From positions 1 through 64,000 of IMG/VR virus record IMGVR_UViG_3300042558_004148: a stretch of 64,000 nucleotides of DNA; one strand, given 5' to 3'. The notes under the pieces were generated by a model. The model was not told where the DNA came from and ran no database searches. It saw only the letters and a program-made list of their open reading frames with translations. A program made the translations under genes and the position numbers. Of the stretch, positions 1 through 37,481 are shown one piece after another (position 1 is the stretch's first letter; each line of letters begins with the position of its first letter).

Positions 1-2
1 CT

Positions 3-848
3 TCAGGTACTGATGGAACTTCAGGTACCGATGGAACAAGCGGAACAAGTGGTACCGATGGAACTTCTGGAACAAGTGGTACTGATGGAACTTCTGGAAC
101 AAGTGGTACTGATGGAACTTCAGGTACTGATGGAACAAGCGGAACTTCAGGTACTGATGGAACTTCTGGAACAAGTGGTACTGACGGAACAAGCGGAACA
201 AGTGGTACCGATGGAACTTCTGGAACAAGTGGTACTGATGGAACAAGTGGTACTGATGGAACAAGTGGTACTGATGGAACAAGCGGAACAAGTGGTACCG
301 ATGGAACTTCTGGAACAAGTGGTACTGATGGAACAAGTGGTACCAATGGAACTTCTGGAACATCAGGTACTGATGGAACAAGCGGAACAAGTGGTACTGA
401 TGGAACTTCTGGAACAAGTGGTACTGATGGAACTTCTGGAACAAGTGGTACTGATGGAACTTCAGGTACCGATGGAACAAGTGGTACCGATGGAACTTCT
501 GGAACAAGTGGTACTAATGGAACTTCTGGAACAAGTGGTACTGATGGAACCTCAGGAACTGATGGAACATCTGGAACCTCAGGAACTGATGGAACCTCAG
601 GAACTGATGGAACAAGTGGTACTGATGGAACAAGTGGTACTGATGGAACAAGTGGTACTGATGGAACAAGTGGTACTGATGGAACAAGTGGTACTGATGG
701 AACAAGTGGTACCGATGGAACAAGTGGTACCGATGGAACAAGTGGTACTAACGGTACATCGGGAACTGATGGAACTAATGGAACATCAGGTACTAACGGA
801 TCTTCAGGTACTAACGGAACATCAGGAACAGCTGGAACTAGCGGCGTA
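3..848 (+). repeat. Collagen-like Gly-X-Y block 1 (GTS/GTD-dominated)
   Basis: Tandem GGAACTTCA/GGTACTGAT/GGAACAAGT 9-mers encoding GTS-GTD; GTN appears only from about 745. Confidence 0.95.
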
Positions 849-3800
849 GATGGAATATCATCAGGTCAAATATATTTTTTCAATGAAAGTATTAATTCGG
901 ACGTTTCAGGTTACAAAGAATTAAGTTTAAATCCAACATCTACGGGTCAAGTAACGGTAACTACAAATTTAACAGGTAGTCAAACTGGTGCTTTAGTTCA
1001 AGATTTTATGACACCTGAATTAGGATTTTCAATAATACCTGGTGGTGTACAAAGATTTAAGTTATATTATTTACTACCTGCGGTAAACGCTGATGTTGAA
1101 GGGTATGTTGAAATCCAATTGGCTGATTCATCGGGGTCTTTAATGGGACCTACAATAACTTCTAATGTTAGTGCATTGCCTTATGTTGACCCAACTAATC
1201 CGGGATTACTTGAGGTTGATATAGTATTACCTACAACATCAATATCCACAACTGATAGAATGGCGATAAGACTTTATCTTAATAATTTAGATTCGACAAG
1301 TCGTAGTGTTGTATTTTATACTGAAGGTAATGCTAACTATTCATATATAATAACATCAGTTGGTCAAATCGCTGGTACATCAGGAACTTCAGGTACTAAC
1401 GGATCATCGGGATCAAACGGAACTTCAGGTACTAACGGTACTGACGGAACATCGGGAACTAATGGAACTTCAGGTACTAACGGTACTAATGGAACATCAG
1501 GTACTAACGGAACTAATGGAACTTCAGGTACTAACGGAACTAGTGGAACGGATGGTACGTCAGGAACTAATGGTACGTCAGGTACAAACGGAACCAATGG
1601 AACATCAGGAACCAATGGAACATCAGGAACCAATGGAACATCAGGAACAAACGGAACCAATGGTACCTCAGGTACTGACGGAACTTCAGGGACTGATGGA
1701 GGTAATTTAACAGCATCTAATTACGTTGCTAAAGGAGTTAAAGGAGGTACCATTCAAACAATAACAAATGGAAGTGACCAAGTTGTAACATTTGTTGATG
1801 AGTTTGACCCTAATGGTTGGATAACATCCAATAAATTCCAACCAAACATTGAAGGGTATTATATTATTCAAGTTTCGGTATGGTGGTATCCTGCGTCAAC
1901 AGTATCAGGGCAAAATAATATCCAACTTAGAAAAAATGGTAGTACACAAGTTGCGATTCAACAATTTCCACTTGTTACTACTGAAGGGTACGGTCAAGAA
2001 ATTGATATTATAGTATATTTTAATGGTTCTACTGATTATATCGAGGTTACTGCTTACACCTCTAATCCAACATCGCAAGACATACACGGTGAGAGTTCAG
2101 GTACTTGGATTACCGGATCATTAGTTGTTGGTGGCGGAACTTCAGGTACTGATGGAACTTCAGGTACTAATGGAACCAACGGAACATCAGGAACCAATGG
2201 AACCAATGGAACCAATGGTACTTCAGGTACTGACGGAACTTCAGGAACCAATGGAACATCAGGTACTAACGGAACATCAGGTACTAATGGATCCTCAGGA
2301 ACCAATGGAACATCAGGTACTAACGGTACTAACGGAACCTCAGGTACTAATGGATCCTCAGGAACCAATGGAACATCGGGTACTAACGGTACTGACGGAA
2401 CATCAGGTACTAACGGAACCTCAGGTACTAATGGATCCTCAGGTACTAACGGTACTGACGGAACATCAGGAGCCAATGGAACTTCAGGTACTAACGGTAC
2501 TAACGGAACCTCAGGTACTAACGGAACATCAGGTACTAACGGAACATCAGGAACTAACGGAACATCGGGTACTAACGGTACCAATGGAACATCAGGTACT
2601 AATGGATCCTCAGGTACTAACGGAACATCAGGAACCAATGGAACATCAGGTACTAACGGTACTAATGGAACATCAGGTACTAATGGAACATCAGGAACCA
2701 ATGGAACATCAGGAACCAATGGTACTGACGGAACATCAGGAACCAATGGAACATCAGGTACTAATGGATCCTCAGGTACTAACGGTACTAATGGAACATC
2801 AGGTACTAATGGAACATCAGGAACTAATGGAACCAACGGAACATCAGGTACTAATGGATCCTCAGGAACCAATGGAACATCAGGTACTAACGGTACTAAT
2901 GGAACATCTGGTACTAATGGATCCTCAGGAACCAATGGAACATCAGGTACTAACGGTACTAATGGAACATCTGGTACTAATGGATCCTCAGGAACCAATG
3001 GATCCTCAGGAACCAATGGAACATCAGGTACTAATGGAACCAACGGAACATCGGGTACTAATGGATCCTCAGGAACTAATGGAACATCAGGTACTAATGG
3101 AACCAACGGAACATCGGGTACTAATGGATCCTCAGGAACTAATGGAACATCAGGTACTAACGGTACTAATGGAACATCAGGAACCAACGGAACTAATGGA
3201 ACTTCAGGTACTAATGGAACTTCAGGTACTAATGGAACTTCAGGAACCAATGGAACTTCAGGAACTAACGGAACCAATGGAACTTCAGGAACCAATGGAA
3301 CATCAGGTACTAATGGAACTTCAGGAACCAATGGAACCAATGGAACTTCAGGTACTAACGGAACTTCAGGAACTAATGGAACCTCAGGAACCAACGGAAC
3401 TAATGGAACTTCAGGAACCAACGGAACTAATGGAACTTCAGGAACCAATGGAACTTCAGGAACCAATGGAACTAATGGAACCTCGGGTACTAACGGAACT
3501 TCGGGAACCAATGGAACCAATGGAACTTCAGGTACTAACGGAACTTCGGGAACCAATGGAACCAATGGAACTTCAGGTACTAACGGAACTTCAGGAACTA
3601 ATGGAACCTCAGGAACCAACGGAACTAATGGAACTTCAGGAACCAACGGAACCAATGGAACTTCAGGTGCTAACGGAACTTCAGGTACTAACGGTACTAA
3701 TGGATCTTCAGGTACTAATGGAACATCGGGTGTAAGCGGATTAAACGGTACTAATGGAACATCAGGTACTAATGGTACTAACGGAACATCGGGTACTAAC

Positions 3801-5582
3801 GGAACATCGGGTACTAACGGAACATCGGGTACTAACGGAACTAATGGAACTTCAGGAACTAATGGGACATCAGGTACTAACGGTACTAATGGAACTTCAG
3901 GAACTAATGGGACATCAGGTACTAACGGTACTAATGGAACTTCAGGAACCAATGGGACATCAGGTACTAATGGAACTTCAGGTACTAATGGAACTTCAGG
4001 TACTAATGGAACTTCAGGTACTAATGGAACATCAGGTATCAATGGTGTAGATGGTGCATCTGGAACATCGGGAACTAATGGAACTAATGGAACTTCAGGT
4101 ACTAACGGTAGTCCAGGTAGTCCAGGTAGCCCAGGAACATCTGGTACTAACGGTACTAACGGAACCTCAGGTACTAATGGAACTTCAGGTACTAACGGTA
4201 GTCCAGGTAGTCCAGGTAGCCCAGGAACATCAGGTACTAATGGTACTTCAGGTACTAGTAGTGGTGGTGCAGCTGCAGTTATTGTATTAGGTGGCGGTAT
4301 TTGTTCATCAATTAGATGTGGTGCGAATAACCAGGCAACTGCAAATTACAGTGCAGCCCTAAGCGGTAGATGCAATTCTTCAGGAGCTGCTTTTTCAGTA
4401 ATCAGTGGAGGTTGCTATAATCGAACAACTAACCTATCCTGTAATTCAGTAATCGGTGGAGGCCTTGTTAACTATATTAGCTCCTGTTATTCAACAATTG
4501 GTGGTGGTTGTCTTAACAGAGTTTGTATTCCAAGAGCTACCATTTCGGGAGGGTTATGTAACCTTATAACTGGTGCTTGCTCAACTATTGGTGGTGGATT
4601 TGATAATTCCATAGCTAGTCGTAGGGCAACTATCGGTGGAGGTAATACCAATAGTGCTGCAGGTGATTCAGATCTTGCAACAATTGGTGGTGGATGTGGA
4701 AATGAGATAGGTAGTTGTGGTATAGCTGCTGTGATTTCAGGAGGATATCAAAATTCCGTGGACGCTGGTTATTCAGCAATCGGAGGGGGAGCTTCAAATC
4801 AGATTGGTTCTGCTAGCCATAAATTTATCGGAGGAGGAAAGGGCAACTTTGTAACTAAAAACACAGGATGCTCCTCAGTTGTTGGAGGACAGGATAATGC
4901 CATTGATGGTGATGCCATAAGATCATTTATTGGAGGTGGATATGGAAATATTATCACTGGTTATGCTTGTCTTAGTTCGATCGCTGGTGGAAGGCAGAAT
5001 GCAATATATCAGGGTGCTTGCCATTCTTTTATCGGGGGCGGAAGATATCATAAAATTCGAAGTGGTTCATGTTATAGCTCCATAGGAGGTGGTTTTAATA
5101 ATGATACAGCAGGTTGCTATAATGTGCATATGTTAGGAAGTAATCTTACTGCTAATCAAAATAACGCAACATTTGTCCAATATATTGTTAAAACTGGTGG
5201 TGGTACTTTTAGTATTGACCACCCAAACCCTAAATTAAGTGATGAATTGAGATTAAATCACTCTTTTGTTGAATCACCAACAGCAGGGGATAATATTTAT
5301 AGATTTAATATTGTAGTTGTTAACGGGGAAGCAATAATTGACTTACCAGATTATTTCAAATATCTAAATAAAGACGCTCAAGTTTGGATAACACCTAAAA
5401 ATGGATTTGGAATTGCTTATGGTGTTATAGACGACACGTATTCAAAGATAACAATTAAGGCAAATCTTGATATAGAATATGATGTACTTGTTATAGGTAC
5501 AAGGAAAGATAAGAATACTAAATTCTGGAAAGGCGCTGAAACACCACAACCCAAAAGAACTGAAACCCCGCAATCAGAATAA
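3..5582 (+). CDS. Giant collagen-like tail or virion fibre protein, 5'-truncated by the window edge (at least about 1,860 aa)
   Basis: Frame 3 is open from base 3 through the listed ATG at 1008 (...GTSGVDGISSGQIYFFNESINSDVSGYKELSLNPTSTG...VQDF-MTPELG), so 1008 is an internal Met. Order: three G-T-[S/D/N] triplet blocks separated by globular domains, a GG beta-roll repeat, then a C-terminal FSIDHP...HSFVESP...IDLPDYF domain of the kind seen at phage fibre ends. Confidence 0.85.
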   Translation, partial: SGTDGTSGTDGTSGTSGTDGTSGTSGTDGTSGTSGTDGTSGTDGTSGTSGTDGTSGTSGTDGTSGTSGTDGTSGTSGTDGTSGTDGTSGTDGTSGTSGTDGTSGTSGTDGTSGTNGTSGTSGTDGTSGTSGTDGTSGTSGTDGTSGTSGTDGTSGTDGTSGTDGTSGTSGTNGTSGTSGTDGTSGTDGTSGTSGTDGTSGTDGTSGTDGTSGTDGTSGTDGTSGTDGTSGTDGTSGTDGTSGTDGTSGTNGTSGTDGTNGTSGTNGSSGTNGTSGTAGTSGVDGISSGQIYFFNESINSDVSGYKELSLNPTSTGQVTVTTNLTGSQTGALVQDFMTPELGFSIIPGGVQRFKLYYLLPAVNADVEGYVEIQLADSSGSLMGPTITSNVSALPYVDPTNPGLLEVDIVLPTTSISTTDRMAIRLYLNNLDSTSRSVVFYTEGNANYSYIITSVGQIAGTSGTSGTNGSSGSNGTSGTNGTDGTSGTNGTSGTNGTNGTSGTNGTNGTSGTNGTSGTDGTSGTNGTSGTNGTNGTSGTNGTSGTNGTSGTNGTNGTSGTDGTSGTDGGNLTASNYVAKGVKGGTIQTITNGSDQVVTFVDEFDPNGWITSNKFQPNIEGYYIIQVSVWWYPASTVSGQNNIQLRKNGSTQVAIQQFPLVTTEGYGQEIDIIVYFNGSTDYIEVTAYTSNPTSQDIHGESSGTWITGSLVVGGGTSGTDGTSGTNGTNGTSGTNGTNGTNGTSGTDGTSGTNGTSGTNGTSGTNGSSGTNGTSGTNGTNGTSGTNGSSGTNGTSGTNGTDGTSGTNGTSGTNGSSGTNGTDGTSGANGTSGTNGTNGTSGTNGTSGTNGTSGTNGTSGTNGTNGTSGTNGSSGTNGTSGTNGTSGTNGTNGTSGTNGTSGTNGTSGTNGTDGTSGTNGTSGTNGSSGTNGTNGTSGTNGTSGTNGTNGTSGTNGSSGTNGTSGTNGTNGTSGTNGSSGTNGTSGTNGTNGTSGTNGSSGTNGSSGTNGTSGTNGTNGTSGTNGSSGTNGTSGTNGTNGTSGTNGSSGTNGTSGTNGTNGTSGTNGTNGTSGTNGTSGTNGTSGTNGTSGTNGTNGTSGTNGTSGTNGTSGTNGTNGTSGTNGTSGTNGTSGTNGTNGTSGTNGTNGTSGTNGTSGTNGTNGTSGTNGTSGTNGTNGTSGTNGTSGTNGTNGTSGTNGTSGTNGTSGTNGTNGTSGTNGTNGTSGANGTSGTNGTNGSSGTNGTSGVSGLNGTNGTSGTNGTNGTSGTNGTSGTNGTSGTNGTNGTSGTNGTSGTNGTNGTSGTNGTSGTNGTNGTSGTNGTSGTNGTSGTNGTSGTNGTSGTNGTSGINGVDGASGTSGTNGTNGTSGTNGSPGSPGSPGTSGTNGTNGTSGTNGTSGTNGSPGSPGSPGTSGTNGTSGTSSGGAAAVIVLGGGICSSIRCGANNQATANYSAALSGRCNSSGAAFSVISGGCYNRTTNLSCNSVIGGGLVNYISSCYSTIGGGCLNRVCIPRATISGGLCNLITGACSTIGGGFDNSIASRRATIGGGNTNSAAGDSDLATIGGGCGNEIGSCGIAAVISGGYQNSVDAGYSAIGGGASNQIGSASHKFIGGGKGNFVTKNTGCSSVVGGQDNAIDGDAIRSFIGGGYGNIITGYACLSSIAGGRQNAIYQGACHSFIGGGRYHKIRSGSCYSSIGGGFNNDTAGCYNVHMLGSNLTANQNNATFVQYIVKTGGGTFSIDHPNPKLSDELRLNHSFVESPTAGDNIYRFNIVVVNGEAIIDLPDYFKYLNKDAQVWITPKNGFGIAYGVIDDTYSKITIKANLDIEYDVLVIGTRKDKNTKFWKGAETPQPKRTETPQSE
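1374..1700 (+). repeat. Collagen-like Gly-X-Y block 2 (GTS/GTN)
   Basis: GTSGTSGTNGSSGSNGTSGTNGTD... in the fibre frame. Confidence 0.95.
1713..2127 (+). other. C1q/TNF-like (BclA C-terminal-like) trimerisation domain inside the fibre
   Basis: Beta-rich ~140 aa between collagen blocks with the pattern F-x-P-x3-GYY-x-I...IQLRKNG...IVYFNGSTDYIEV...TWITGSLV, typical of C1q-like jelly rolls. Confidence 0.65.
2136..4259 (+). repeat. Collagen-like Gly-X-Y block 3 (~700 aa, GTS/GTN, two GSP inserts)
   Basis: About 2.1 kb of near-uninterrupted Gly every third residue; GSPGSPGSPG occurs twice near 4110 and 4200. Confidence 0.95.
4350..5115 (+). repeat. Cys-rich ~15-17 aa GG beta-roll repeats (adhesin-head-like)
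   Basis: About 15 repeats of [SA]-[TVF]-I-[GS]-G-G-x2-N, e.g. SVISGGCYN, STIGGGCLN, ATISGGLCN, SFIGGGYGN. Confidence 0.8.
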
Positions 5583-5589
5583 ATAATTT

Positions 5590-5617
5590 GAAATTTTTTT
5601 CATCAATCGCAGTATAA
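5590..5617 (+). promoter_or_regulatory. Candidate middle (ECF-type) promoter GAAAT-N18-TATAA
   Basis: Same motif and spacing recur upstream of several non-structural genes (34335, 41476, 45611, 46543, 59518). Confidence 0.45.
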
Positions 5618-5634
5618 TAATAAAAACATCTCGA

Positions 5635-6456
5635 TTGATGAAAAAAATAATATTCAACTCATCATTACCTAGATCTGGATCAACACTTTGGCAAAATATA
5701 ATTGCACAAAATCCTGATTTCTATTGCACTCCCACTTCGGGACTTGCTGACATGGTGCTTTCCTCCAAGAACGCTTATAATAATTCGCAAGCTGTTTTAG
5801 CTCAGGATCCGGAGGTCATGAAGAAAGCTTTCATAGGATATTGTATGGCAGGAATTCAGGGATATTTTAATGACATAACGGACAAACCATTTGTACTCGA
5901 AAAAAGTAGGGAATGGGGAGTAAATTACGGACTTCTTAATATGCTCCAGCACGAACCCAAGGTTGTCTGTATGGTTAGGGATCTTAGATCCGTATATTCA
6001 TCAATGGAGAAGAATTTTAGAAAAAACCCACATCGCGAGAATCATGTGCAGAATGTTCCGGAATTGGTCGGTACAACTCTCAGAAAAAGAATAGATATTT
6101 GGGCTGATGGTGTACCTGTTGGTGTTTCTGTTGATAGATTGAGAGATATAATAGATCAGGGAATAGATAAAAATATACTTTTTATTAGATACGAGGACCT
6201 TATGAGCGATCCAGAATCAGAGGTTAAAAGATTCTACGACTATATAGGGATTGACTATTATCCAGGACATAATTTTAAAACAATCGAGCAGGTAACACAT
6301 GAAAATGATTTAATTCATGGAATATACGGTGATCATAAATTAAGAACCGAATTTAAAAGACTACCTGATGATTATGAGGAGATATTAGGATTTGAGCTTT
6401 CTCAGGCAATCAAGAATACCTATGGATGGTTCTATGATTATTTTGAATATGTGTAA
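5635..6456 (+). CDS. PAPS-dependent sulfotransferase
   Basis: N-terminal 5'-PSB loop SSLPRSGSTL; 3'-PB-like MVRDLRSVYSS; IRYEDL motif. Confidence 0.85.
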   Translation: MMKKIIFNSSLPRSGSTLWQNIIAQNPDFYCTPTSGLADMVLSSKNAYNNSQAVLAQDPEVMKKAFIGYCMAGIQGYFNDITDKPFVLEKSREWGVNYGLLNMLQHEPKVVCMVRDLRSVYSSMEKNFRKNPHRENHVQNVPELVGTTLRKRIDIWADGVPVGVSVDRLRDIIDQGIDKNILFIRYEDLMSDPESEVKRFYDYIGIDYYPGHNFKTIEQVTHENDLIHGIYGDHKLRTEFKRLPDDYEEILGFELSQAIKNTYGWFYDYFEYV

Positions 6457-6485
6457 TAAATAATCGATAATTAATTTTTATAATA

Positions 6486-6935
6486 ATGGCAATTTATATA
6501 CTAACCGGTCAACCTCATTCAGGAAAAACAACCCTCGCTAATCATTTAAAAAATTCTTTGGATAAATCTTTCGTTATAGATGGTGACGATCTGAGGGAAA
6601 TACTGAATAATAAGGATTATTCTGAAGCGGGAAGAAGAAAGAACATAGAGACAGCTCATTCGATAGCTAAATACTTATCTAGGCAGGACGTTAATAACAA
6701 TATAATAATATCATTGGTTAGCCCGTATAAAGATCTTAGAGACAGTCTAAAATGCGAAAATGGAGCTGTCGAATTTTATATACATACTTCTGAAATAAGG
6801 GGAAGAGAATCTTTTCATGTAGCAGAATATCAAAAACCTACTGAAGATTTTACTGATATTGACACTACTGGAATATCAGAAACTGAATCACTAAAACAAA
6901 TATTATGGAAAATTGGTCAAAAAAAGTCCATGTAA
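6486..6935 (+). CDS. cysC: Adenylyl-sulfate (APS) kinase, compact form
   Basis: P-loop LTGQPHSGKTT; IDGDDLR; RRKNI; SLVSPY; YQKP. Confidence 0.85.
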   Translation: MAIYILTGQPHSGKTTLANHLKNSLDKSFVIDGDDLREILNNKDYSEAGRRKNIETAHSIAKYLSRQDVNNNIIISLVSPYKDLRDSLKCENGAVEFYIHTSEIRGRESFHVAEYQKPTEDFTDIDTTGISETESLKQILWKIGQKKSM

Positions 6936-7309
6936 AATCATCACTGCAGCCTAAAGATAGTCAATATGCTATGTTTATTGGTAGATGGCAACCACTTCAT
7001 CCAGGTCACAAAGCTATGTTTCAACAAGCTATAAACGATGGTAAGAAGGTATTAATTGCAATCAGAGATATTGAGCCAGATGAAAAAAATCCTTGGACTC
7101 CCAACGAAGTTATGCTTAATATACATTCCGAGATTAGAGATCTAGTTAGTGAAAGGCTAGCAAAGATCATAATAATTCCAGATATATGCTCAGTTGAATT
7201 TGGTAGAGGTGTTGGTTACGATATAATCGAACATATCCCACCAACTGAAATAGCCAATATATCAGCAACTGCGGTTAGAGAGGAATTAAGGAAAGAAGGA
7301 AAATTATAA
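6905..7309 (+). CDS. HxGH (cytidylyltransferase-like) nucleotidyltransferase
   Basis: FIGRWQPLHPGH and ISATAVR signature motifs; overlaps the APS kinase by 31 nt in the -1 frame. Confidence 0.8.
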   Translation: MENWSKKVHVKSSLQPKDSQYAMFIGRWQPLHPGHKAMFQQAINDGKKVLIAIRDIEPDEKNPWTPNEVMLNIHSEIRDLVSERLAKIIIIPDICSVEFGRGVGYDIIEHIPPTEIANISATAVREELRKEGKL

Positions 7310-7563
7310 TGGAAACTAATCAGGAAATTCTAAAAAAGTCAGATAGAAAAGAAAATAGATCTAATATGATAAGACACATATTAAAAACACTTTCTTATAG
7401 AATATTAGGCACGATGACAACTGTAATTACTGCATATATGTTAGGAGCTTCGGTAGAATTAGCATCATTACTAGGTATGGGAGAGATTGTTTTCAAGCCT
7501 ATTATATATTTTTTGCATGAGAGAATTTGGTATAAATTCATCAGGATAGGATCAAAAAAATAA
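7309..7563 (+). CDS. DUF2061-like small membrane protein
   Basis: RHILKTLSYRILGT...IYFLHERIW pattern with two hydrophobic stretches; ATG overlaps the upstream stop. Confidence 0.75.
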   Translation: METNQEILKKSDRKENRSNMIRHILKTLSYRILGTMTTVITAYMLGASVELASLLGMGEIVFKPIIYFLHERIWYKFIRIGSKK

Positions 7564-7567
7564 GCAC

Positions 7568-8443
7568 ATGAATATAATATTGGAGGTTTCTGGTGGATTG
7601 GGTAAAAGCTTTATGTCCACCGCTGTAGTAAAAGCTTTACGTAAACAGTATACTAGAGATAACATAATAGTGGTAACATCATATCCCGATGTTTTTAAAG
7701 GTAATAATAATGTTAATAGAATTATTACCCACGCAAATGCGGGTCCAATTTATAGGGATTTTATTAACAACAAGGAAGCTAAAGTATTTATTACCGATCC
7801 ATACACAACCTCCGATTTTATAACGGAAAAAAAACATCTTATCGAGATATGGTGCGATTTGTGTGGTGTCCCTTATGATGGGGAACTGCCTGAATTATTT
7901 ATAAGTAAATCTGAAAGACAATATTATGAGCAGTTTTATAAATTAGATAAGCCTATAATGGCTATACATCCGAATGGTGGAAGCATAGAGCAACCTCTAA
8001 AATATAGCTGGACCCGAGATATTCCGCAACCAATAATTGAGAATATTATAGAGCACTATAAAGATGATTATTCCGTGGTACATATAAGAAGGGAAGATCA
8101 ATTTCAATATGATAACACAATTTCTGCATTGGATAATTTTAGAAGCATTGCAATTATGCTGACCCTTTCAGAAAAAAGACTTCTTATAGACTCATCTGCG
8201 ATGCATATAGCATCTTCCCTGGGTTTACCGTCAACAGTTGCCTGGATCGGAACAAATCCCAAAGTTTTTGGCTATAATATACATGATAATATAATTGCTA
8301 ATCCACATACGGAAAAGCACGATATATCGAATAATTACTATCAGAAATATATGTTATTTGAGGATATCAGTAGAATACCATATTCCGATATGAATGACAT
8401 TTTTAATATTAGCGATATTATAGATAGCATAAATAAACAATAA
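7568..8443 (+). CDS. GT9-like (ADP-heptose-type) glycosyltransferase
   Basis: SGGLGK...TAVVKALRK N-terminus; LLIDSSAMHIASSLGLPSTVAW C-terminal GT-B motif. Confidence 0.7.
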   Translation: MNIILEVSGGLGKSFMSTAVVKALRKQYTRDNIIVVTSYPDVFKGNNNVNRIITHANAGPIYRDFINNKEAKVFITDPYTTSDFITEKKHLIEIWCDLCGVPYDGELPELFISKSERQYYEQFYKLDKPIMAIHPNGGSIEQPLKYSWTRDIPQPIIENIIEHYKDDYSVVHIRREDQFQYDNTISALDNFRSIAIMLTLSEKRLLIDSSAMHIASSLGLPSTVAWIGTNPKVFGYNIHDNIIANPHTEKHDISNNYYQKYMLFEDISRIPYSDMNDIFNISDIIDSINKQ

Positions 8444-8454
8444 AAATAAAAAAT

Positions 8455-8730
8455 ATGGAAAATGAATTAAAATTACCTGAAGATCTAATTTTAGAAATTC
8501 AAAATCTGAAAGAGGTTTTGATGGATAATATAATTAAAGTGGGTAGATTAAGTGTACAGAAATCCTTTTACGAGAAGGACCTTTCCGCTATAAACAACGA
8601 ATTAGAATCCTTACATAACGAAGCTTCTGACATATATGCTAGGGAGGAAGCTTTGCAGGAGAAGGTAGTCGGTAAATACGGTAAAGGTAAACTCGATTTT
8701 GAGACTGGATTATTTACGAAGGATATGTAA
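8455..8730 (+). CDS. Small acidic coiled-coil hypothetical protein
   Basis: Clean ORF with A-rich leader inside the operon; heptad-like helix. Confidence 0.6.
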   Translation: MENELKLPEDLILEIQNLKEVLMDNIIKVGRLSVQKSFYEKDLSAINNELESLHNEASDIYAREEALQEKVVGKYGKGKLDFETGLFTKDM

Positions 8731-8736
8731 TTCCTT

Positions 8737-9669
8737 ATGAAGAAACTCTGTATAGATATAAGCGAGGCTAGAGCTATTGGCGATACATTATGTGTATCGC
8801 CAGTTTTGCGTAAACTATATTACTCATATGGTAGAAAAATATCTATAATAACTCATCATACAGATATATTTAGAAATAATCCATATGTTGATTCTCTATA
8901 TCTTCCTGGTGATCTTGATTTGGATGATGATTTCGAAATATTTAGAACTTTCGATGTAAACTATAAATCCGATGGCATATGCAATAAGCATAATACTATT
9001 GACATTAGGCAGTTCCATGCAATTAGCCTTGGATTCATGTTAAATCAGGAGGAACTTACTTTGGATTTTTTCCCTTCTGATTTTGAAGAAATACAGGGAC
9101 TTCCCGATAGATACGTTCTTATACATCCCGTACAAAACTGGGAATCCAGAACATGGGATAGAGAAAAATGGATTCTATTAGTCAGAGCTTTGAATGCGGG
9201 CGGAATAAGTGTGGTTTCTGTCGGAAAGGAGTCATCCGAAATGGGTGGATCCAATGTTCAAAAGCCAACCTTTAATTTTGATATTGAATTGGGTATGAAT
9301 TTACAGAACAAAACATCATTATCTCAGACGTGGTGGCTGATTGAAAAAAGTGAATGCTTCGTTACTATGGATTCTGGTCTTCTACATTTAGCAGGTACTA
9401 CCGATTCTGAAATAATTCAATTAGGCAGTTCAATAGATAATAAGTTTAGAGCACCATATAGAAAGGGATCTCAGGAATATAAATACCATTATGTTTCTGG
9501 TGGATGTAATTTGAAATGTGCGTCTGATATAAAATATGGTGTAAGAGAATGGAACACGATACAGGGAATACCTTCGTTGGTCGGATGTCTGGAGGGAAAG
9601 AAAACTTTCGAATGCCATCCAAGCGTAATGAGTGTTTATAATAAAATAATGTCCACTGTTAATAAATAA
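8737..9669 (+). CDS. GT9-family glycosyltransferase with C-terminal Cys cluster
   Basis: AIGDTLCVSPVLRKL; FVTMDSGLLHLAG; C-x3-C...C-x8-C near the C-terminus. Confidence 0.8.
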   Translation: MKKLCIDISEARAIGDTLCVSPVLRKLYYSYGRKISIITHHTDIFRNNPYVDSLYLPGDLDLDDDFEIFRTFDVNYKSDGICNKHNTIDIRQFHAISLGFMLNQEELTLDFFPSDFEEIQGLPDRYVLIHPVQNWESRTWDREKWILLVRALNAGGISVVSVGKESSEMGGSNVQKPTFNFDIELGMNLQNKTSLSQTWWLIEKSECFVTMDSGLLHLAGTTDSEIIQLGSSIDNKFRAPYRKGSQEYKYHYVSGGCNLKCASDIKYGVREWNTIQGIPSLVGCLEGKKTFECHPSVMSVYNKIMSTVNK

Positions 9670-9677
9670 GTATCCGG

Positions 9678-10607
9678 ATGGGTAATAAAATAATATTGAT
9701 TAGTTCATATTGCGATAATGAGGAAAAGATTAGTGTATTAGAATCTAATATAAGAACACTAAAAAATCTCGGTCTGGATGTTATGCTTAATAGTCCTATT
9801 GATATACCAAATAGGGTCTCCTCATTATGCGATTATTATATAAGAACTAAAGATAATCCGATTATCGACTGGCCAATTAAATCGGTATCGGTTTGGTCTG
9901 AATATCGATGTAAAGGGAAGAAAATAATTATGAATAGATGTCTACCTGATTACGGATGGGCAAATATCCATCAGGTAAAAAAATTATCAGAATATGCATT
10001 AACGTATGATTATGAATATTTCTACCATATAATATATGATATAAAAATTGACGATACCGTTTTGAGTGGTATACTATCCGATGCGGAATGTAATTTCTAT
10101 CATTTCCATGAGCATTGGGTAAGTCTACATTTTATGCTATTTGATAGGAAAAACTTAGTATCATTTATATCTGGATTAAATATAAATGAATATATTGAAT
10201 TTTGTGGAATTGCTGAAACCTGGCTAAAAAACTACCTGGAGAATTCAGATTTGCCGTATAAAGTGGATGATTGTTATGTTGATGACCATATACTTTTTCA
10301 TAATGGAGTAGATCTTTTTAATTATTCGGGATTTTCTGAATTTAGGTATTTCATAGCTAAAAATGCTATGGAAAATAATTCTATTAAAATTTATTTCTAT
10401 GGTGTTAAAAATCATATTGATTTAAAAATCCACCTTAATTCAACCACAAAAATATACGAAATAGCTGATAGAGATATAATAGATCTTGAATTATCTCGCG
10501 ATGACATGATATCTGTCATAATTGAATATAACGGATTAACCGAAGATATAACTGAAAAAATAAGATCCATAACACACAATAATATTAATTTATATGAAGA
10601 GAATTAA
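9678..10607 (+). CDS. Hypothetical protein in the glycosylation cluster
   Basis: 309-aa ORF overlapping the next gene; no confident family. Confidence 0.6.
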   Translation: MGNKIILISSYCDNEEKISVLESNIRTLKNLGLDVMLNSPIDIPNRVSSLCDYYIRTKDNPIIDWPIKSVSVWSEYRCKGKKIIMNRCLPDYGWANIHQVKKLSEYALTYDYEYFYHIIYDIKIDDTVLSGILSDAECNFYHFHEHWVSLHFMLFDRKNLVSFISGLNINEYIEFCGIAETWLKNYLENSDLPYKVDDCYVDDHILFHNGVDLFNYSGFSEFRYFIAKNAMENNSIKIYFYGVKNHIDLKIHLNSTTKIYEIADRDIIDLELSRDDMISVIIEYNGLTEDITEKIRSITHNNINLYEEN

Positions 10608-13473
10608 ACTATTATATTTAACCCCACATCTATCAACCGGTGGAATGCCTCAGTTCGCACTGAAGAGAATACAGAAACTTAATGAATATAGTGATGAGAT
10701 AGAAATCTTTGTTGTCGAGTACTCCAAATTTAGTGATACCTATGTTGTCCAAAGAAATTCAATACTTGAAATGATTGACAGTGATCATTTCTTTACACTG
10801 GGGGATACATCCGATACTAGAAGAAAATATGAGATAATTCAGATAATTAAGGATAATGATATAGATTTAGTTCATTCAGAGGAAATATTAGAGGGATTTG
10901 AAAGTTTTAATAAGATCCCTGCTGATTTAATTAACATGTTATATTCCGATGATAGAAGCTGGAGAATGATTGAAACCTGTCATAATATTTGGTTTGATCC
11001 GAAAGAATTTAAAAAATTAAAACCTGATGCATATTCATTAATTTCACCACATCATACGGAAAAAACATTCGCATCTGAGTCCTCATATAAGGAGCTTCAT
11101 CTATATCCATATGAGAATAAAACAGATATAAGAATAAAAAATAGGAAGAATTCTATCAAAAAACTGGGATTTGATAGAAATAAGAAAAACGTTCTCAATG
11201 TTGGATTATGGACTAGTGGAAAGAATCAGGGAGAGGGAATAGAAATTGCTAGATTCATAGAATCATCTAGTCCTGATGTATTTTTTCATTTTGTAGGTAA
11301 TTTAGCTCCAAATTTCGAAAATTACTGGGGAGATATAACAAAGAATCTACCAAGCAATGTTAAGATATGGGGGGAGCGTGACGATGTTGATGAATTCATG
11401 ATAGCATGTGACGCCATGATGTTTAATTCTACCTGGGAATGCAATCCTTTAGTTATAAGAGAAGCCATAGGATATGGCATGAAGATATTAGCCAGAAATC
11501 TACCGCAATATTATAACATGTATGATGGATACATCACTCCGATAGAGGGTGATATAAAAGAAATATCGGGACGACTTATTGATATGCTTGAATCTGATAT
11601 TGAATATCAGGTACCTGATGATTCTAATTTTGGTAGGACATTATTGGATTTCTATAGGAAGGTAATGGAGATAGAAATAACACCACAGCCTAAAATAGAA
11701 AATGACTACGAGTTTATACAACATTTTGTTGGTCAGCCCTATTTCGAATTAAGAGGCAGTAGTAGTAATAAATTTAAGGTGGAATTCTCTGATGGTGGAA
11801 AAATTATACATTCGGATCTCCTAAATTTTAATAGCTGGTCGAAATTAAACAGAAAATATTATACCAAATGGGACACAACGGTATATGAAAATGGTGAAAT
11901 AATATATAAGAATTCATTAGATCTTAGGGACAGAAGAGTTTATATTGCATTTGGATCTAAATCTCTAGGTGATACTCTTGCGTGGATACCTTACATGGAG
12001 GAATTTAGAAAAATTCATAATTGCGAATTGATAGTTTCTACGTTCATTAATCACTTATTCATTGAACAGTATCCCAATATTACTTTTGTCAATCCAGGGG
12101 AAACTGTAAATAATTTATATGCCCAATATAATATTGGATGGTATTATGACAGTAACGGAAATATTGATTATAATAAGGTTCCAAACGACTTTAGAAAACA
12201 ACCTTTACAGAAGACAGCCACTGATATACTCGGTCTCGAATATAAGGAAATAAAGCCTCGTTTAAATTTACCTAACGTGAAAAAAAAGAAAAAAGTTGGG
12301 ATAGGATTTCATTCAACTGCTCAGGCCAAATACTGGAACAATCCTAACGGATGGCAAGAGGTAATTGATCATCTTAATTCGATTGGTTATGAATGCATGA
12401 TATATTCCAGAGAGGGAGACGGATATATGAATAATGCATATCCAAAAAATGTTGATGTGTTTAAAGGCGGAAATCTACAGGATGTAATAAATGATCTGTG
12501 TGAGTGTGAATTTTTCATTGGCTTGGGCTCTGGATTAAGTTGGCTAGCTTGGTCATGTAAATTACCAATCATTTTGATTTCTGGATTTAGTGAAAGATTT
12601 TCTGAAACTTCATCCGACACATATAGAATTATTAACGAGGATGTTTGCCACGGATGCTTTAATTCGGAAATGCTAGATGCTGGAGATTGGAATTGGTGTC
12701 CATTACATAAAAATTCGGAGAGAATGTTTGAGTGTACAAAACAAATTAATTCTAATATGGTTACCAAGGAAATAGATAGATTAATTGGGGAAAATCACAT
12801 ACCAAATTTTGATTGGGGTTGGATGAACGATGGTAGTTCTAATGGTAATTATCACAAGAAACTTATGTATAATGAGATATTTGAGCAAAAAATATATGAG
12901 AGATTCTTTGAAGTTGATCATTCCGATATTGTATTGGATGTTGGTTCTAGCGTCGGCCCATTCACATATTCGATATTAAAGAAAAATCCTAAACATGTAT
13001 TTTGTATAGAACCTAGTGAGAGTGAATTTACTACACTAGTTAAAAATACATTAGGTAATCCGGTTACTCATATAAATAAGGGATTATCAGATATAAATGG
13101 AGTTATCGAATATGATCAATTATTTGGAGGAGAAACACATATGGAATCCATTACCTTTGATAAGCTCGTTAAATTATACGGTCTGAATAGGATAGATTTC
13201 ATGAAAACTGATTGTGAGGGCGGTGAATATGAGATTTTTAAGAAAGATAATCTTGACTTTATTAAAAAAAATATAAAGAAGATTGCCGGCGAATGGCATT
13301 TAATGAGTAAAGAAAATAAAGAAAAATTCAGGGATTTCCGGGATAATATATTAATAGAGTTCGATCGATATGAGGTATTATCATTAGATGGTATTGATAT
13401 AAAATGGGATCTATGGAACGAACATTTTATAGAGTATTATAATGAGGTCCTTATATACATAGATAATAGATAG
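10594..13473 (+). CDS. Three-domain enzyme: GT4 glycosyltransferase + Aah/TibC-type (BAHT) protein O-heptosyltransferase + FkbM-family methyltransferase
   Basis: GT4: PHLSTGGMPQ, GERDDV, ECNPLVIREA. BAHT: RVYIAFGSKSLGDTLAWIPY and the iron-finger VCHGCFN...WNWCPLHK...FECTKQI. FkbM: VLDVGSSVGPF, IDFMKTDCEGGEY. Confidence 0.8.
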   Translation: MKRIKLLYLTPHLSTGGMPQFALKRIQKLNEYSDEIEIFVVEYSKFSDTYVVQRNSILEMIDSDHFFTLGDTSDTRRKYEIIQIIKDNDIDLVHSEEILEGFESFNKIPADLINMLYSDDRSWRMIETCHNIWFDPKEFKKLKPDAYSLISPHHTEKTFASESSYKELHLYPYENKTDIRIKNRKNSIKKLGFDRNKKNVLNVGLWTSGKNQGEGIEIARFIESSSPDVFFHFVGNLAPNFENYWGDITKNLPSNVKIWGERDDVDEFMIACDAMMFNSTWECNPLVIREAIGYGMKILARNLPQYYNMYDGYITPIEGDIKEISGRLIDMLESDIEYQVPDDSNFGRTLLDFYRKVMEIEITPQPKIENDYEFIQHFVGQPYFELRGSSSNKFKVEFSDGGKIIHSDLLNFNSWSKLNRKYYTKWDTTVYENGEIIYKNSLDLRDRRVYIAFGSKSLGDTLAWIPYMEEFRKIHNCELIVSTFINHLFIEQYPNITFVNPGETVNNLYAQYNIGWYYDSNGNIDYNKVPNDFRKQPLQKTATDILGLEYKEIKPRLNLPNVKKKKKVGIGFHSTAQAKYWNNPNGWQEVIDHLNSIGYECMIYSREGDGYMNNAYPKNVDVFKGGNLQDVINDLCECEFFIGLGSGLSWLAWSCKLPIILISGFSERFSETSSDTYRIINEDVCHGCFNSEMLDAGDWNWCPLHKNSERMFECTKQINSNMVTKEIDRLIGENHIPNFDWGWMNDGSSNGNYHKKLMYNEIFEQKIYERFFEVDHSDIVLDVGSSVGPFTYSILKKNPKHVFCIEPSESEFTTLVKNTLGNPVTHINKGLSDINGVIEYDQLFGGETHMESITFDKLVKLYGLNRIDFMKTDCEGGEYEIFKKDNLDFIKKNIKKIAGEWHLMSKENKEKFRDFRDNILIEFDRYEVLSLDGIDIKWDLWNEHFIEYYNEVLIYIDNR

Positions 13474-23077: not shown

Positions 23078-23093
23078 AAATTAAAAAATATAA

Positions 23094-37477: not shown

Positions 37478-37481
37478 TAAG

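What the first reader, a model, noticed from the sequence alone, without database searches (positions are those of the whole stretch)
3..5582. The fibre gene is much larger than the ORF track shows and has a BclA-like modular collagen/C1q architecture
Seen: frame 3 has no stop from base 3 to 5582, so the protein is at least ~1,860 aa and starts outside the window. Layout: collagen(GTD) - globular domain - collagen - C1q-like - 700-aa collagen - beta-roll - C-terminal domain. The triplets are proline-free (Thr in X, Ser/Asn/Asp in Y). Inference: a 235-triplet block at the standard ~0.29 nm per residue gives a ~200 nm filament, and proline-free collagens of this type may depend on glycosylation for stability.
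Basis: partly seen in the sequence, partly recalled or inferred. Interest (0 to 1): 0.62.

Follow-up and report, generated by a model that had tools for sequence, protein, structure and literature searches.

The report
Giant segmented collagen fibre of a jumbo phage
The open frame is real and is the 3' two-thirds of one 2,700-residue gene of a 373-kb bacteriophage, encoding a probable trimeric, roughly half-micrometre collagen-like virion fibre with three rods, two globular nodes and an adhesin-like tip; this is an extreme variant of a known kind of phage fibre.

Summary
Confirmed and extended. Frame 3 is open from 3 to 5582. The window is the start of a circularly closed 373,485-bp jumbo myophage record. 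The gene's 5' end (ATG at genome 370838) lies at the record's other end. Closing the 127-nt overlap gives one 8,103-nt frame: 2,700 aa, 253 kDa, pI 4.05. An independent assembly spans the junction at 100% identity, and two distant relatives carry complete 2,673- and 2,845-aa genes with the same layout.

Layout: 341-aa anchor, 262 triplets, CBM-like jelly roll, 37 triplets, C1q/TNF-like jelly roll, 236 triplets, Cys-rich UspA1-type beta-roll, conserved tip domain. The C1q-like call holds at fold level (Z 9-10; BclA C-domain Z 8.8) and the domain models as a trimer (0.95 versus control 0.00), but there is no sequence membership in C1q or BclA.

Thr sits in X, the reverse of BclA-type collagens; six GSP triplets exist. 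The gene lies beside neck genes and is followed by a sulfotransferase/APS-kinase/glycosyltransferase cassette. Triple-helix formation, glycosylation and attachment site are untested. The read-level check could not be run. Triplet counts are approximate because assemblies differ by in-frame indels.

The parts
3..860 (+). Distal 286 residues of collagen rod 1. The whole rod has 262 Gly-Thr-Ser/Asp/Asn triplets (protein residues 342-1127) and begins at genome 371861, outside the window. It has 86 acidic and no basic residues.
   Evidence: Pfam Collagen E 7e-151. The junction is spanned at 100% identity by L005.
861..1373 (+). Globular node A (171 aa, residues 1128-1298): galactose-binding/CBM-like jelly-roll sandwich.
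   Evidence: Model pLDDT about 90. VIA Z 13.4, 12.4, 11.6 and 10.3 to CocE/PepX-type C-terminal domains; CBM15 Z 9.8, CBM35 Z 9.1. 13 homologues sit between collagen runs in other proteins. No Pfam or PHROG hit.
1374..1706 (+). Collagen rod 2: 37 triplets (residues 1299-1409), about 32 nm.
1707..2135 (+). Globular node B (143 aa, residues 1410-1552): TNF/C1q-like jelly roll, predicted homotrimer.
   Evidence: VIA Z 9.9 BAFF, 9.6 C1QL1, 8.8 BclA C-domain 1wck (121 of 136 aligned), 8.8 collagen VIII NC1 and PRD1 P5. Foldseek C1QL1/C1q E 1e-4. Trimer score 0.95 versus best control 0.00, pLDDT 93. 74% identical in L010/L011.
2136..4259 (+). Collagen rod 3: 236 Gly-Thr-Asn/Ser triplets (residues 1553-2260), about 202 nm. 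Six Gly-Ser-Pro triplets lie at 4107-4223.
   Evidence: One assembly (L007) lacks 21 residues here.
4260..5159 (+). Beta-roll head (residues 2261-2560): about 18 repeats of 14-18 residues with a GGG-x-x-N motif. It holds all 17 cysteines of the protein.
   Evidence: phmmer to UspA1 head 3pr7, E 5e-17. VIA Z 6.6, rmsd 2.0, 26% identity for the last turns. Repeat register; Cys positions.
5160..5582 (+). Tip domain (residues 2561-2700) plus stop codon: conserved beta-sandwich with no named family.
   Evidence: 65 homologues at 42-61% identity without Pfam. 17 invariant positions. Model pLDDT 83.7. Only weak PDB matches, to distal domains of phage tailspikes and R2 pyocin fibre, Z at most 7.2. Atlas phage fibre/tailspike clusters.
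5635..7309 (+). Candidate accessory genes: sulfotransferase (5635-6456), APS kinase (6486-6935), nucleotidyltransferase-fold protein (6905-7309).
   Evidence: Pfam Sulfotransfer_3 E 4e-16, APS_kinase E 1e-12, CTP_transf_like E 5e-6. They co-occur with relatives of the fibre.
7568..8443 (+). orf291, unknown function; travels with the sulfotransferase in four locus types.
   Evidence: No hit in Pfam, NCBIfam or PDB sequences. Co-occurrence.
8737..13473 (+). Glycosyltransferase GT9 (8737-9669), orf309, and a 959-aa GT1 + GT9 + FkbM-methyltransferase fusion (10594-13473).
   Evidence: The fusion is 46% identical beside the L010/L011 fibres.
13959..16448 (+). T4-type neck protein: context that places the fibre gene in a neck-side module (not part of the fibre).
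   Evidence: Pfam T4_neck-protein E 9e-6; PHROG head closure Hc2. Synteny in L018.

Best explanation
This is a structural fibre of a 373-kb contractile-tailed jumbo phage, made as one 2,700-residue chain that most likely assembles as a homotrimer. A conserved N-terminal domain of about 290-340 residues anchors it to the virion. From there run three collagen-type triple-helical rods of about 225, 32 and 202 nm. Each rod is closed at its C-terminal end by a trimeric globular unit that can set the chain register: a CBM-like jelly roll, a C1q/TNF-like jelly roll, and finally a cysteine-rich adhesin-type beta-roll capped by a conserved tip sandwich. The distal beta-roll and tip, possibly with the CBM-like node, bind the host surface, so the phage can catch cells from about 0.45-0.5 micrometre away. 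The gene is a mosaic: the lineage's own anchor domain is fused to a distal assembly otherwise found on fibres with a different N-terminus. Shown: the sequence, the architecture, the folds, the modelled trimer of node B, the relatives and the gene context. Inferred: virion location (I favour the neck or collar because of gene order), triple-helix formation, host binding, and any decoration by the neighbouring sulfation/glycosylation genes.
For: There is a single uninterrupted frame after circular closure, confirmed by an independent assembly across the junction and by complete 2,673- and 2,845-aa homologues lying inside contigs. The genome is a myophage: sheath, tube, portal, protease, major head protein and TerL. 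Gly is kept at 535 of 535 positions with degenerate DNA. Node B has a TNF/C1q fold and a trimer model scoring 0.95 against 0.00 for controls. Node A has a CBM-like fold. The head matches UspA1 at E 5e-17. The tip family is found at the C-terminal end of phage fibre fragments and resembles distal domains of receptor-binding proteins. The anchor domain is shared at 58-70% identity by fibres of 509-1,501 aa with unrelated distal parts. The order gp15-like, Mtd_N protein, fibre, neck protein, TerL, sheath is conserved and parallels T4's wac-13-14-15-16-17-18 order (my knowledge of the T4 map). Conventional fibre genes lie elsewhere, at 108-114 kb and 339-345 kb.
Against: There is no experimental or proteomic evidence that the protein is in the virion. 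The N-terminal domain has no recognised fold or family, so the attachment site rests on gene order alone. Its cultured-phage homologue (Atu_ph07) is an unannotated protein next to a 'tail fiber protein'. No triple helix made of Gly-Thr-Ser/Asp/Asn triplets has been shown to be stable. Node A trimerisation was not tested. The tip has only weak structural matches (Z at most 7.2). Exact rod lengths are uncertain: near-identical assemblies differ by in-frame deletions of 3 to 54 residues, and the 127-nt closing overlap occurs three times.
Confidence: 0.72

Rival explanations
1. Same fibre, but attached to the baseplate as a long tail fibre or receptor-binding protein rather than to the neck or collar.
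For: Collagen-containing phage proteins in PHROGs are mostly annotated as tail fibres. The gene just upstream carries an Mtd_N motif typical of tail-fibre N-termini. The Atu_ph07 homologue of the anchor lies beside an annotated tail fibre gene. The distal domains resemble those of tailspikes and pyocin fibres.
Against: The gene sits between a gp15-like sheath stabiliser and the neck protein, about 110 kb from the cluster of very large ORFs and tandem fibre paralogues that looks like the baseplate/fibre module. This is gene order only.
Confidence: 0.3
2. A capsid-attached 'hair' or head fibre, as described for some jumbo phages.
For: The anchor domain has homologues in Atu_ph07, whose long thin 'whiskers' are reported as mainly capsid-associated. 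Head fibres are described for Tenacibaculum phage PTm1.
Against: Nothing links the Atu_ph07 homologue to those whiskers; it was not found in the held supplement. There is no decoration-protein signature: the best Atlas lead, Phage_cement_2, scored 0.80, below the lead threshold.
Confidence: 0.12
3. The Gly-Thr-X arrays are not triple helices but flexible, heavily O-glycosylated, mucin-like spacers between folded domains.
For: There is almost no proline (0.6%), Thr is in X rather than Y, and there are no charge pairs in rods 2 and 3, so the known stabilising features of bacterial collagens are missing. The structure models give pLDDT about 24 for the monomeric repeat. Glycosyltransferases are adjacent.
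Against: Gly is kept at every third residue 535 times without one interruption, despite degenerate DNA and frequent indels, and every observed indel is a multiple of three residues. Both features are hard to explain for a disordered spacer. Each array is flanked by domains of trimer-forming folds. Array lengths are similar in relatives (262 versus 264 triplets).
Confidence: 0.15
4. Assembly artefact: the long frame results from mis-joining or collapse of repeats, and the true gene is shorter or split.
For: The record closes on a 127-nt overlap that lies inside the repeat and occurs three times. All near-identical contigs break inside this gene. Assemblies disagree by 3-54 residues inside the arrays. 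Reads could not be checked.
Against: L005 spans the junction at 100% identity over 6,152 nt. All differences are in frame and confined to the arrays, with no mismatches in 1,861 other residues. L010 and L011, from other samples, hold complete genes of the same architecture inside 99-kb and 46-kb contigs.
Confidence: 0.05

Closest known systems
Bacillus anthracis BclA (exosporium collagen-like glycoprotein) and F-BclA of B. thuringiensis
   Same: A collagen-like, Thr-rich rod is followed by a trimeric C1q/TNF-fold globule (VIA Z 8.8 to 1wck and 8.7 to 9h38). It is a surface filament, and glycosylation is known for BclA.
   Different: There is no sequence-level relationship. Thr is in X here, whereas it is in Y in BclA-type collagens. 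The C1q-like domain is internal, between two rods. The protein is about 2,700 aa with three rods. It is phage-encoded with a different N-terminal anchor.
PRD1 spike protein P5 and other phage fibres with collagen-like stretches (E. coli prophage collagens, PMC3368898)
   Same: It is a phage adsorption protein that combines a Gly-X-Y stretch with a TNF-like trimeric knob (PRD1 P5, Z 8.8), with collagen serving as a trimeric spacer in phage fibres.
   Different: Those collagen stretches are short; a review describes phage collagens as about 18 residues. Here there are 1,605 collagen residues in three rods, with two internal nodes and an adhesin-type head.
Trimeric autotransporter adhesins (Moraxella UspA1, Yersinia YadA heads)
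   Same: The 300-residue head shares the GGG-x-x-N beta-roll repeat with the UspA1 head (E 5e-17; Z 6.6 at 26% identity). It is an obligately trimeric adhesive head on a long stalk.
   Different: There is no membrane-anchor beta-barrel, no coiled-coil stalk and no Pfam YadA_head/Hep_Hag hit. The stalk is collagen, the head is Cys-rich (17 Cys), and the C-terminus is a phage-type sandwich.
T4 fibritin (wac), the neck whisker
   Same: The gene position relative to the neck, terminase and sheath genes matches (the T4 order is from my knowledge). It is a trimeric fibre with an N-terminal virion anchor.
   Different: There is no sequence or fold relationship. Fibritin is a coiled coil of roughly 50 nm with a foldon (my knowledge), whereas this is collagen-based and about ten times longer. 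Attachment to the neck is not shown.
Uncharacterised metagenomic fibres L010 and L011 (IMG/VR 3300017917_001914, 3300037502_000915)
   Same: They have the same central and distal architecture. By domain: node A E 1e-60, node B 74% identical, head about 42%, tip 64%. Array lengths are similar and the same modification cassette lies nearby.
   Different: They have a different N-terminal region (short globules with small collagen runs), interrupted third rods, longer heads (673-689 aa), and the cassette on the opposite strand.

Membership tests
Collagen triple-helix repeat proteins (Pfam PF01391) | Uninterrupted Gly-X-Y periodicity over many triplets | tested here: met
   Runs of 262, 37 and 236 triplets with Gly at 535 of 535 positions. 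Pfam Collagen E 7e-151.
Collagen triple-helix repeat proteins (Pfam PF01391) | Formation of a stable three-chain helix | not testable with these tools
   The monomer model gives pLDDT about 24 for the repeat. No trimer model of a rod was made. This needs CD, melting or EM.
BclA-type exosporium collagen-like glycoproteins | Sequence homology of the C-terminal domain, with the C1q-like domain at the C-terminus | tested here: not met
   No Pfam hit other than Collagen. Fold similarity only (Z 8.8, 16% identity). The domain is internal (residues 1410-1552 of 2,700).
BclA-type exosporium collagen-like glycoproteins | Gly-Pro-Thr / Gly-X-Thr triplets (Thr in Y) | tested here: not met
   Thr is in X in 92% of triplets and in Y in 0%. 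The review states bacterial collagens have Pro in X and Thr in Y.
C1q/TNF superfamily | Ten-strand jelly-roll fold | tested here: met
   All top matches for model residues 282-425 are TNF/C1q members, Z 8.5-9.9, 107-123 residues aligned at 2.6-3.6 A. Foldseek E 1e-5 to 4e-4. Monomer pLDDT is only 50-74 but 93 in the trimer model.
C1q/TNF superfamily | Homotrimer about the threefold axis | tested here: met
   Model only: score 0.95, best of 3 controls 0.00, runs agree in at least 98% of contacts, pLDDT at least 93. The mark was reached by 20 of 30 solved pairs and 1 of 23 single chains. The pass may reflect likeness to solved trimers.
C1q/TNF superfamily | Sequence signature (Pfam C1q PF00386 or TNF) | tested here: not met
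   No hit even at E up to 10.
Trimeric autotransporter adhesins | Head built of left-handed beta-roll repeats | tested here: met
   UspA1 head 3pr7 E 5e-17 over query residues 24-248. VIA Z 6.6, rmsd 2.0, 26% identity; SadA Z 5.2.
Trimeric autotransporter adhesins | C-terminal YadA-type membrane-anchor barrel and coiled-coil stalk | tested here: not met
   The C-terminus is a 140-aa beta-sandwich of a phage family. No Pfam anchor or stalk hit.
Phage virion fibre / receptor-binding protein | Encoded in the structural module of a tailed phage | tested here: met
   Flanked by the gp15-like sheath stabiliser and by the neck protein, TerL and sheath. Synteny is conserved in L017 and L018.
Phage virion fibre / receptor-binding protein | Presence in virions and binding to host | not testable with these tools
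   The phage is uncultured and no proteome exists.
T4 fibritin-like neck whiskers | Coiled-coil shaft with C-terminal foldon; N-terminal attachment to the neck proteins | tested here: not met
   No coiled coil; the shaft is Gly-X-Y. Only gene position resembles wac. Attachment was not tested.
Carbohydrate-binding modules / galactose-binding-like domains (node A) | Beta-sandwich jelly roll of this superfamily | tested here: met
   Z 13.4 (155 aligned, 3.1 A) to 8yzn, 12.4, 11.6 and 10.3 to CocE/PepX C-domains; CBM15 9.8, CBM35 9.1.
Carbohydrate-binding modules / galactose-binding-like domains (node A) | Sugar-binding site | not tested
   No ligand-site comparison was made, and sequence identity to all matches is 8-16%.

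The most novel reading that the evidence does not exclude
The fibre is a roughly 0.5-micrometre neck- or head-proximal 'whisker' whose Thr/Ser-rich collagen rods or Cys-rich head are decorated by the phage's own cassette (APS kinase + sulfotransferase + GT1/GT9 glycosyltransferases + FkbM methyltransferase). That would make it a sulfated, methylated O-glycoprotein, and the first virion protein known to be sulfated by phage-encoded enzymes. It would also be a Thr-in-X, proline-free collagen whose stability depends on that decoration.
Probability: 0.12. Interest if true: 0.8.

Novelty: new variant of a known kind. Interest (0 to 1): 0.55.

Why it matters
Phage fibres with short collagen stretches and TNF-like knobs are known. 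A single chain carrying 1,605 collagen residues in three rods, about 460 nm of helix, is different in scale. That is longer than most phage tails and comparable to the longest vertebrate collagens.

It uses a triplet chemistry (Gly-Thr-Ser/Asn/Asp, almost no proline, Thr in X) for which no stability rules exist. Yet this chemistry is common among unnamed metagenomic phage proteins: 48 of the 125 proteins fetched here. If the rods are true triple helices, they define a new sequence solution for collagen stability, useful for designed biomaterials.

The repeated 'rod plus C-terminal trimer knot' layout suggests how very long helices are kept in register. The linkage to a phage-borne PAPS/sulfotransferase/glycosyltransferase cassette gives a concrete, testable case of possible virion sulfo-glycosylation.

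There is also a practical point. These genes break metagenomic assemblies: every near-identical contig ends inside this gene. They can also create 'direct terminal repeats' that are only k-mer overlaps inside a repeat.

Tried and rejected
- Pfam, PHROGs and NCBIfam on the four non-collagen pieces gave nothing beyond chance, so there is no sequence-level C1q, BclA, YadA_head or tail-fibre family assignment.
- ESM Atlas by features gave only unnamed phage clusters for the anchor (0.83) and the tip (0.95).
- Foldseek against the PDB gave no match below 1e-3 for the tip.
- A megablast of window 4400-9000 and a tblastn of the head and tip against 50,697 deposited phages gave no match. Node A gave one weak hit in an uncultured 642-kb phage.
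- Baseplate Pfam models gp25 and Baseplate_J found nothing in the genome. The baseplate location is therefore inferred only from a cluster of very large ORFs and tandem fibre paralogues.
- Sigma-70 promoter and terminator scans around the gene were at or below the shuffle expectation.
- The Atu_ph07 virion-proteome supplement did not list the anchor homologue.
- A host hint from the sulfotransferase failed. The only genome hit is a 15-kb contig in a MAG labelled Iainarchaeum, with sulfotransferase and APS kinase but no fibre. The host therefore stays unknown. Bacteroidota is only a guess, based on TerL relatives such as the Lak phages and low G+C.
- phmmer missed node B in L010/L011 because of bias filtering; blastp recovered it.
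- I considered a giant eukaryotic virus and rejected it: the genome has sheath, portal, T4-type terminase and HK97-type head genes.

Full report
**1. Observation**

Frame 3 of the window is open from base 3 up to the stop codon at 5580-5582. The ATG-limited ORF starts only at 1008, so the ORF track does understate the gene.

Boundaries in window coordinates:
- collagen, 3-860
- 171-aa globule, 861-1373
- 37 triplets, 1374-1706
- 143-aa globule, 1707-2135
- 236 triplets, 2136-4259
- repeat region, 4260-5159
- terminal domain, 5160-5579

Thr occupies X in 92% of triplets, and Ser, Asn or Asp occupy Y. 'Proline-free' is almost right: six Gly-Ser-Pro triplets lie at 4107-4223.

**2. The whole gene**

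The window is bases 1-64000 of a 373,485-bp IMG/VR virus record classed as having direct terminal repeats, with a CheckV completeness estimate of 100%. The last 2.6 kb of the record hold an ORF that starts with ATG at 370838. It encodes 341 non-collagen residues and then runs off the end in the same Gly-Thr-X repeat.

The exact terminal repeat is 127 nt and lies inside the collagen array. Removing one copy joins the two ends in frame, giving 8,103 nt and 2,700 codons with one stop at the end. The protein is 253.5 kDa with pI 4.05.

The 127-mer occurs a third time, 162 nt upstream of the end copy. The 'terminal repeat' is therefore best read as an assembly overlap closing a circle inside a repeat, and the copy number of a 54-residue unit is not secured by this assembly alone.

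Independent evidence for the join and the architecture:
- Contig L005, from another sample, matches the joined gene from nt 1952 to 8103 at 100% identity, across the junction.
- Three other near-identical contigs differ only by in-frame deletions inside the arrays: 54 residues, exactly the loop unit, in L006; 3, 3, 24 and 21 residues in L004; 21 residues in L007. There are no mismatches in the remaining 1,861 or so residues.
- All of these contigs end inside this gene.
- Two distant relatives, L010 and L011, carry complete genes of 2,673 and 2,845 aa well inside 99-kb and 46-kb contigs. Both have the same order: long collagen, 171-aa globule, about 40 triplets, 146-aa globule, long collagen, large C-terminal region.

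The architecture is therefore real. The triplet counts (262, 37, 236) should be read as approximate or polymorphic.

The four other assemblies all keep the frame open across window 3-1008.

**3. Is the periodicity more than a DNA repeat?**

The arrays are degenerate at DNA level, with 63-75% matches. There are 30-34 distinct 9-mers for only 9-11 peptide triplets, and Gly-Thr-Ser alone is written 15 ways. Ser uses both AGY and TCN codons, and Gly uses four codons, yet Gly is present at 535 of 535 first positions. All indels between assemblies are multiples of three residues. This is the pattern expected for selection on an uninterrupted Gly-X-Y register.

**4. The genome and the neighbourhood**

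The virus is a contractile-tailed jumbo phage. Genes found in the window:
- sheath, 19139-22492
- two tube paralogues, 22523-23669
- TerL of T4 type, 17249-19069
- two adjacent portal-like genes, 35879-39098
- prohead protease, 50884-52854
- major head protein, 52871-54574

TerL is 38-39% identical to uncultured huge phages of 462-642 kb, and about 31% identical to Sphingomonas phage PAU and the Lak phages. The host is unknown.

Around the fibre the order is:
- PKD-domain protein
- T4 gp15-like sheath stabiliser
- orf97
- a 262-aa protein with an Mtd_N motif
- the fibre
- sulfotransferase
- APS kinase
- a nucleotidyltransferase-fold protein
- orf84
- orf291
- orf91
- GT9 glycosyltransferase
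- orf309
- a GT1 + GT9 + FkbM-methyltransferase fusion
- T4-type neck protein
- orf262
- TerL
- sheath

In the related phage L018 (TerL 87% identical) the same order holds, but the fibre is 1,501 aa and the modification genes are absent.

**5. The domains**

*Anchor (residues 1-341).* It has no family or fold assignment. Its first 290 or so residues are 58-70% identical in at least 14 other proteins of 509-1,501 aa. In those proteins it is followed directly by 5-43 triplets and by distal parts unrelated to ours. Weaker homologues (about 32% identity) exist in the cultured jumbo phages Atu_ph07, Phosso and SCTP-2. In Atu_ph07 the homologue is a 347-aa hypothetical protein next to an annotated tail fibre gene. 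A conserved N-terminus with exchangeable distal parts is the usual signature of a virion-attachment domain.

*Node A.* The model has pLDDT about 90. Its best matches are the C-terminal jelly rolls of CocE/PepX-type hydrolases (Z 13.4, 12.4, 11.6, 10.3) and carbohydrate-binding modules (CBM15 Z 9.8, CBM35 Z 9.1). Thirteen homologues sit between collagen runs in other metagenomic proteins.

*Node B.* Every top match for model residues 282-425 is a TNF/C1q-superfamily member:

| Match | Z |
|---|---|
| BAFF | 9.9 |
| EDA | 9.9 |
| C1QL1 (116 residues at 2.9 A) | 9.6 |
| Cbln1 | 9.4 |
| BclA C-domain 1wck (121 of 136 residues, 16% identity) | 8.8 |
| Collagen VIII NC1 | 8.8 |
| PRD1 P5 | 8.8 |
| Cyanophage short-fibre domain | 8.6 |

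Foldseek agrees. Three copies model as a trimer with score 0.95 against 0.00 for the best of three controls, with at least 98% contact agreement and pLDDT at least 93. That mark was reached by 20 of 30 solved pairs and by 1 of 23 single chains, and the pass may partly reflect likeness to solved C1q/TNF trimers. No Pfam C1q or TNF signature is present.

*Head.* About 18 repeats of 14-18 residues with a GGG-x-x-N motif match the UspA1 head at E 5e-17. The modelled last turns superpose on UspA1 at Z 6.6, 2.0 A and 26% identity. All 17 cysteines of the protein lie here.

*Tip.* This 140-residue domain has 65 homologues at 42-61% identity, none with a Pfam domain. Most are fragments at the ends of short contigs, and 17 positions are invariant. 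The model (pLDDT 83.7) has only weak PDB matches, all to distal domains of phage receptor-binding proteins: the Pam1 tailspike at Z 7.2, the R2 pyocin fibre foot at 7.0, and AP22 gp53 at 5.9. In the Atlas it matches phage collagen, tailspike and tail-tip clusters, and a giant-virus cluster with YadA-head repeats.

**6. How it most likely works**

Each rod is followed on its C-terminal side by a domain of a trimer-forming kind: rod 1 by node A, rod 2 by node B, rod 3 by the head and tip. I infer that these act as registration and nucleation knots, so three chains can zip into helices of about 225, 32 and 202 nm (0.286 nm per residue). The total is about 460 nm of helix and close to 0.5 micrometre overall.

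Rod 1 is strongly acidic (86 Asp, no basic residue), whereas rods 2 and 3 are neutral and polar.

The distal beta-roll and tip, and perhaps the CBM-like node, would bind the host surface, while the anchor holds the fibre on the particle.

On gene order the fibre sits where fibritin (wac) sits in T4, next to the neck genes; the T4 map is from my own knowledge. The genome's more conventional fibre genes lie about 110 kb away. I therefore favour a neck or collar position, but this is inference only. Baseplate or capsid attachment remain live rivals.

The gene is a mosaic: the lineage's anchor domain joined to an L010/L011-type distal assembly, since those relatives have a different N-terminus.

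**7. The modification cassette**

The cassette (sulfotransferase, APS kinase, nucleotidyltransferase, orf84, orf291 and the GT fusion) recurs beside the L010 and L011 fibres on the opposite strand, at 46-67% identity. The sulfotransferase-orf291 pair also lies directly beside two collagen-free beta-roll proteins, L012 and L013. Loci chosen through the anchor domain, whose fibres lack the beta-roll, lack the sulfotransferase.

The cassette therefore tracks the beta-roll head at least as well as the collagen. This is a small, non-independent sample. It gives circumstantial support to the idea that the fibre is decorated, but it does not show which part is decorated, or whether the target is the fibre at all. 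Virion glycosylation by phage enzymes has a precedent in mycobacteriophages, as cited in PMC12619734.

**8. Comparison with what is known**

A review of prokaryotic collagens states that Pro dominates X and Thr dominates Y in bacterial collagens, that BclA is glycosylated, and that phage collagens are short. This fibre reverses the Thr register and has almost no Pro.

That chemistry is not unique. Of 125 collagen proteins fetched here, 48 have Thr in X in more than 60% of triplets, and 102 have under 2% Pro. This sample is biased, though, because the query's own words were used to fetch it.

This protein has the most triplets (535). L011 has 513, L010 has 451, and no other phage-type hit exceeds 227. 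A 2026 review of jumbo phages does not mention collagen, but it describes hairy and head-fibred jumbo phages.

The protein is not a member of the BclA, C1q or trimeric-autotransporter families by sequence or by full architecture. It borrows their folds.

**9. Verdict**

- The gene is larger still, at 2,700 aa.
- 'BclA-like' is an analogy rather than family membership.
- The beta-roll is specifically of the adhesin-head type.

This is an extreme, mosaic variant of a known kind of object, a phage collagen-like fibre. Function, triple-helix formation, decoration and attachment site all remain untested.

Noticed in passing
window 1-127 and genome 373197-373323, 373359-373485: The record's 'direct terminal repeat' is exactly 127 nt, lies inside the collagen array and occurs three times. 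It looks like an assembler k-mer overlap closing a circle within a repeat rather than a physical terminal repeat of the phage.
   Followed up: partly
window 5635-13473; L010:11212-16983; L011:11856-17627; L012:13652-15186; L013:7161-8845: A cassette of sulfotransferase, APS kinase, nucleotidyltransferase, orf291 and a GT1+GT9+methyltransferase fusion recurs next to fibres with the UspA1-like beta-roll. The sulfotransferase-orf291 pair also sits next to collagen-free beta-roll proteins. A phage-borne PAPS-dependent sulfation system would be unusual.
   Followed up: partly
window 35879-37477 and 37482-39098: Two adjacent genes (532 and 538 aa) both match the portal-protein family phrog_213 (E 2.5e-56 and 1.4e-66): a tandem portal duplication.
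   Followed up: no
window 22523-23077 and 23094-23669: Two adjacent tail-tube paralogues (184 and 191 aa), both matching phrog_32623 and tail-tube families.
   Followed up: no
collagen arrays: joined residues 633-839 (genome 372734-373358) and 1837-1857 (window 2988-3050): Near-identical assemblies from other samples differ from this one only by in-frame deletions of 3 to 54 residues inside the arrays, with no substitutions elsewhere. This is either rapid length polymorphism or assembly collapse.
   Followed up: partly
genome 108376-113750 and 338752-344863 (L021:9377-14751; L022:753-6864): At least six further genes carry short collagen runs (6-36 triplets). They include three tandem 520-710-aa paralogues that hit tail-fibre PHROGs just after four very large ORFs (1,214-1,823 aa) of unknown function, probably the baseplate/fibre module.
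   Followed up: partly
L003:4994-5782 (genome 369993-370781): The gene immediately upstream of the fibre encodes a 262-aa protein with a Major-tropism-determinant N-terminal motif (Mtd_N, E 9e-13). It is conserved at 57-58% identity in the same position in L017 and L018, and could be an adaptor or a small second fibre.
   Followed up: no
protein residues 2275-2546 (window 4302-5117): All 17 cysteines of the 2,700-aa protein lie in the beta-roll head, and the heads of L009, L010 and L011 are also Cys-rich. UspA1, the closest solved relative, shows no cysteines over the stretch aligned. This suggests disulfide bracing of an extracellular head.
   Followed up: no
whole genome: Strong strand bias: 189 of 215 ORFs of at least 200 aa are on the + strand. 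Mre11/Rad50-like genes (L003:69-2845) lie just upstream of the structural block.
   Followed up: no
L023 (JABHJM010000084.1, 15-kb contig): The only genome-collection relative of the sulfotransferase (47% identity, with an APS kinase beside it) is in a MAG labelled Candidatus Iainarchaeum. This may be a mis-binned viral contig.
   Followed up: partly
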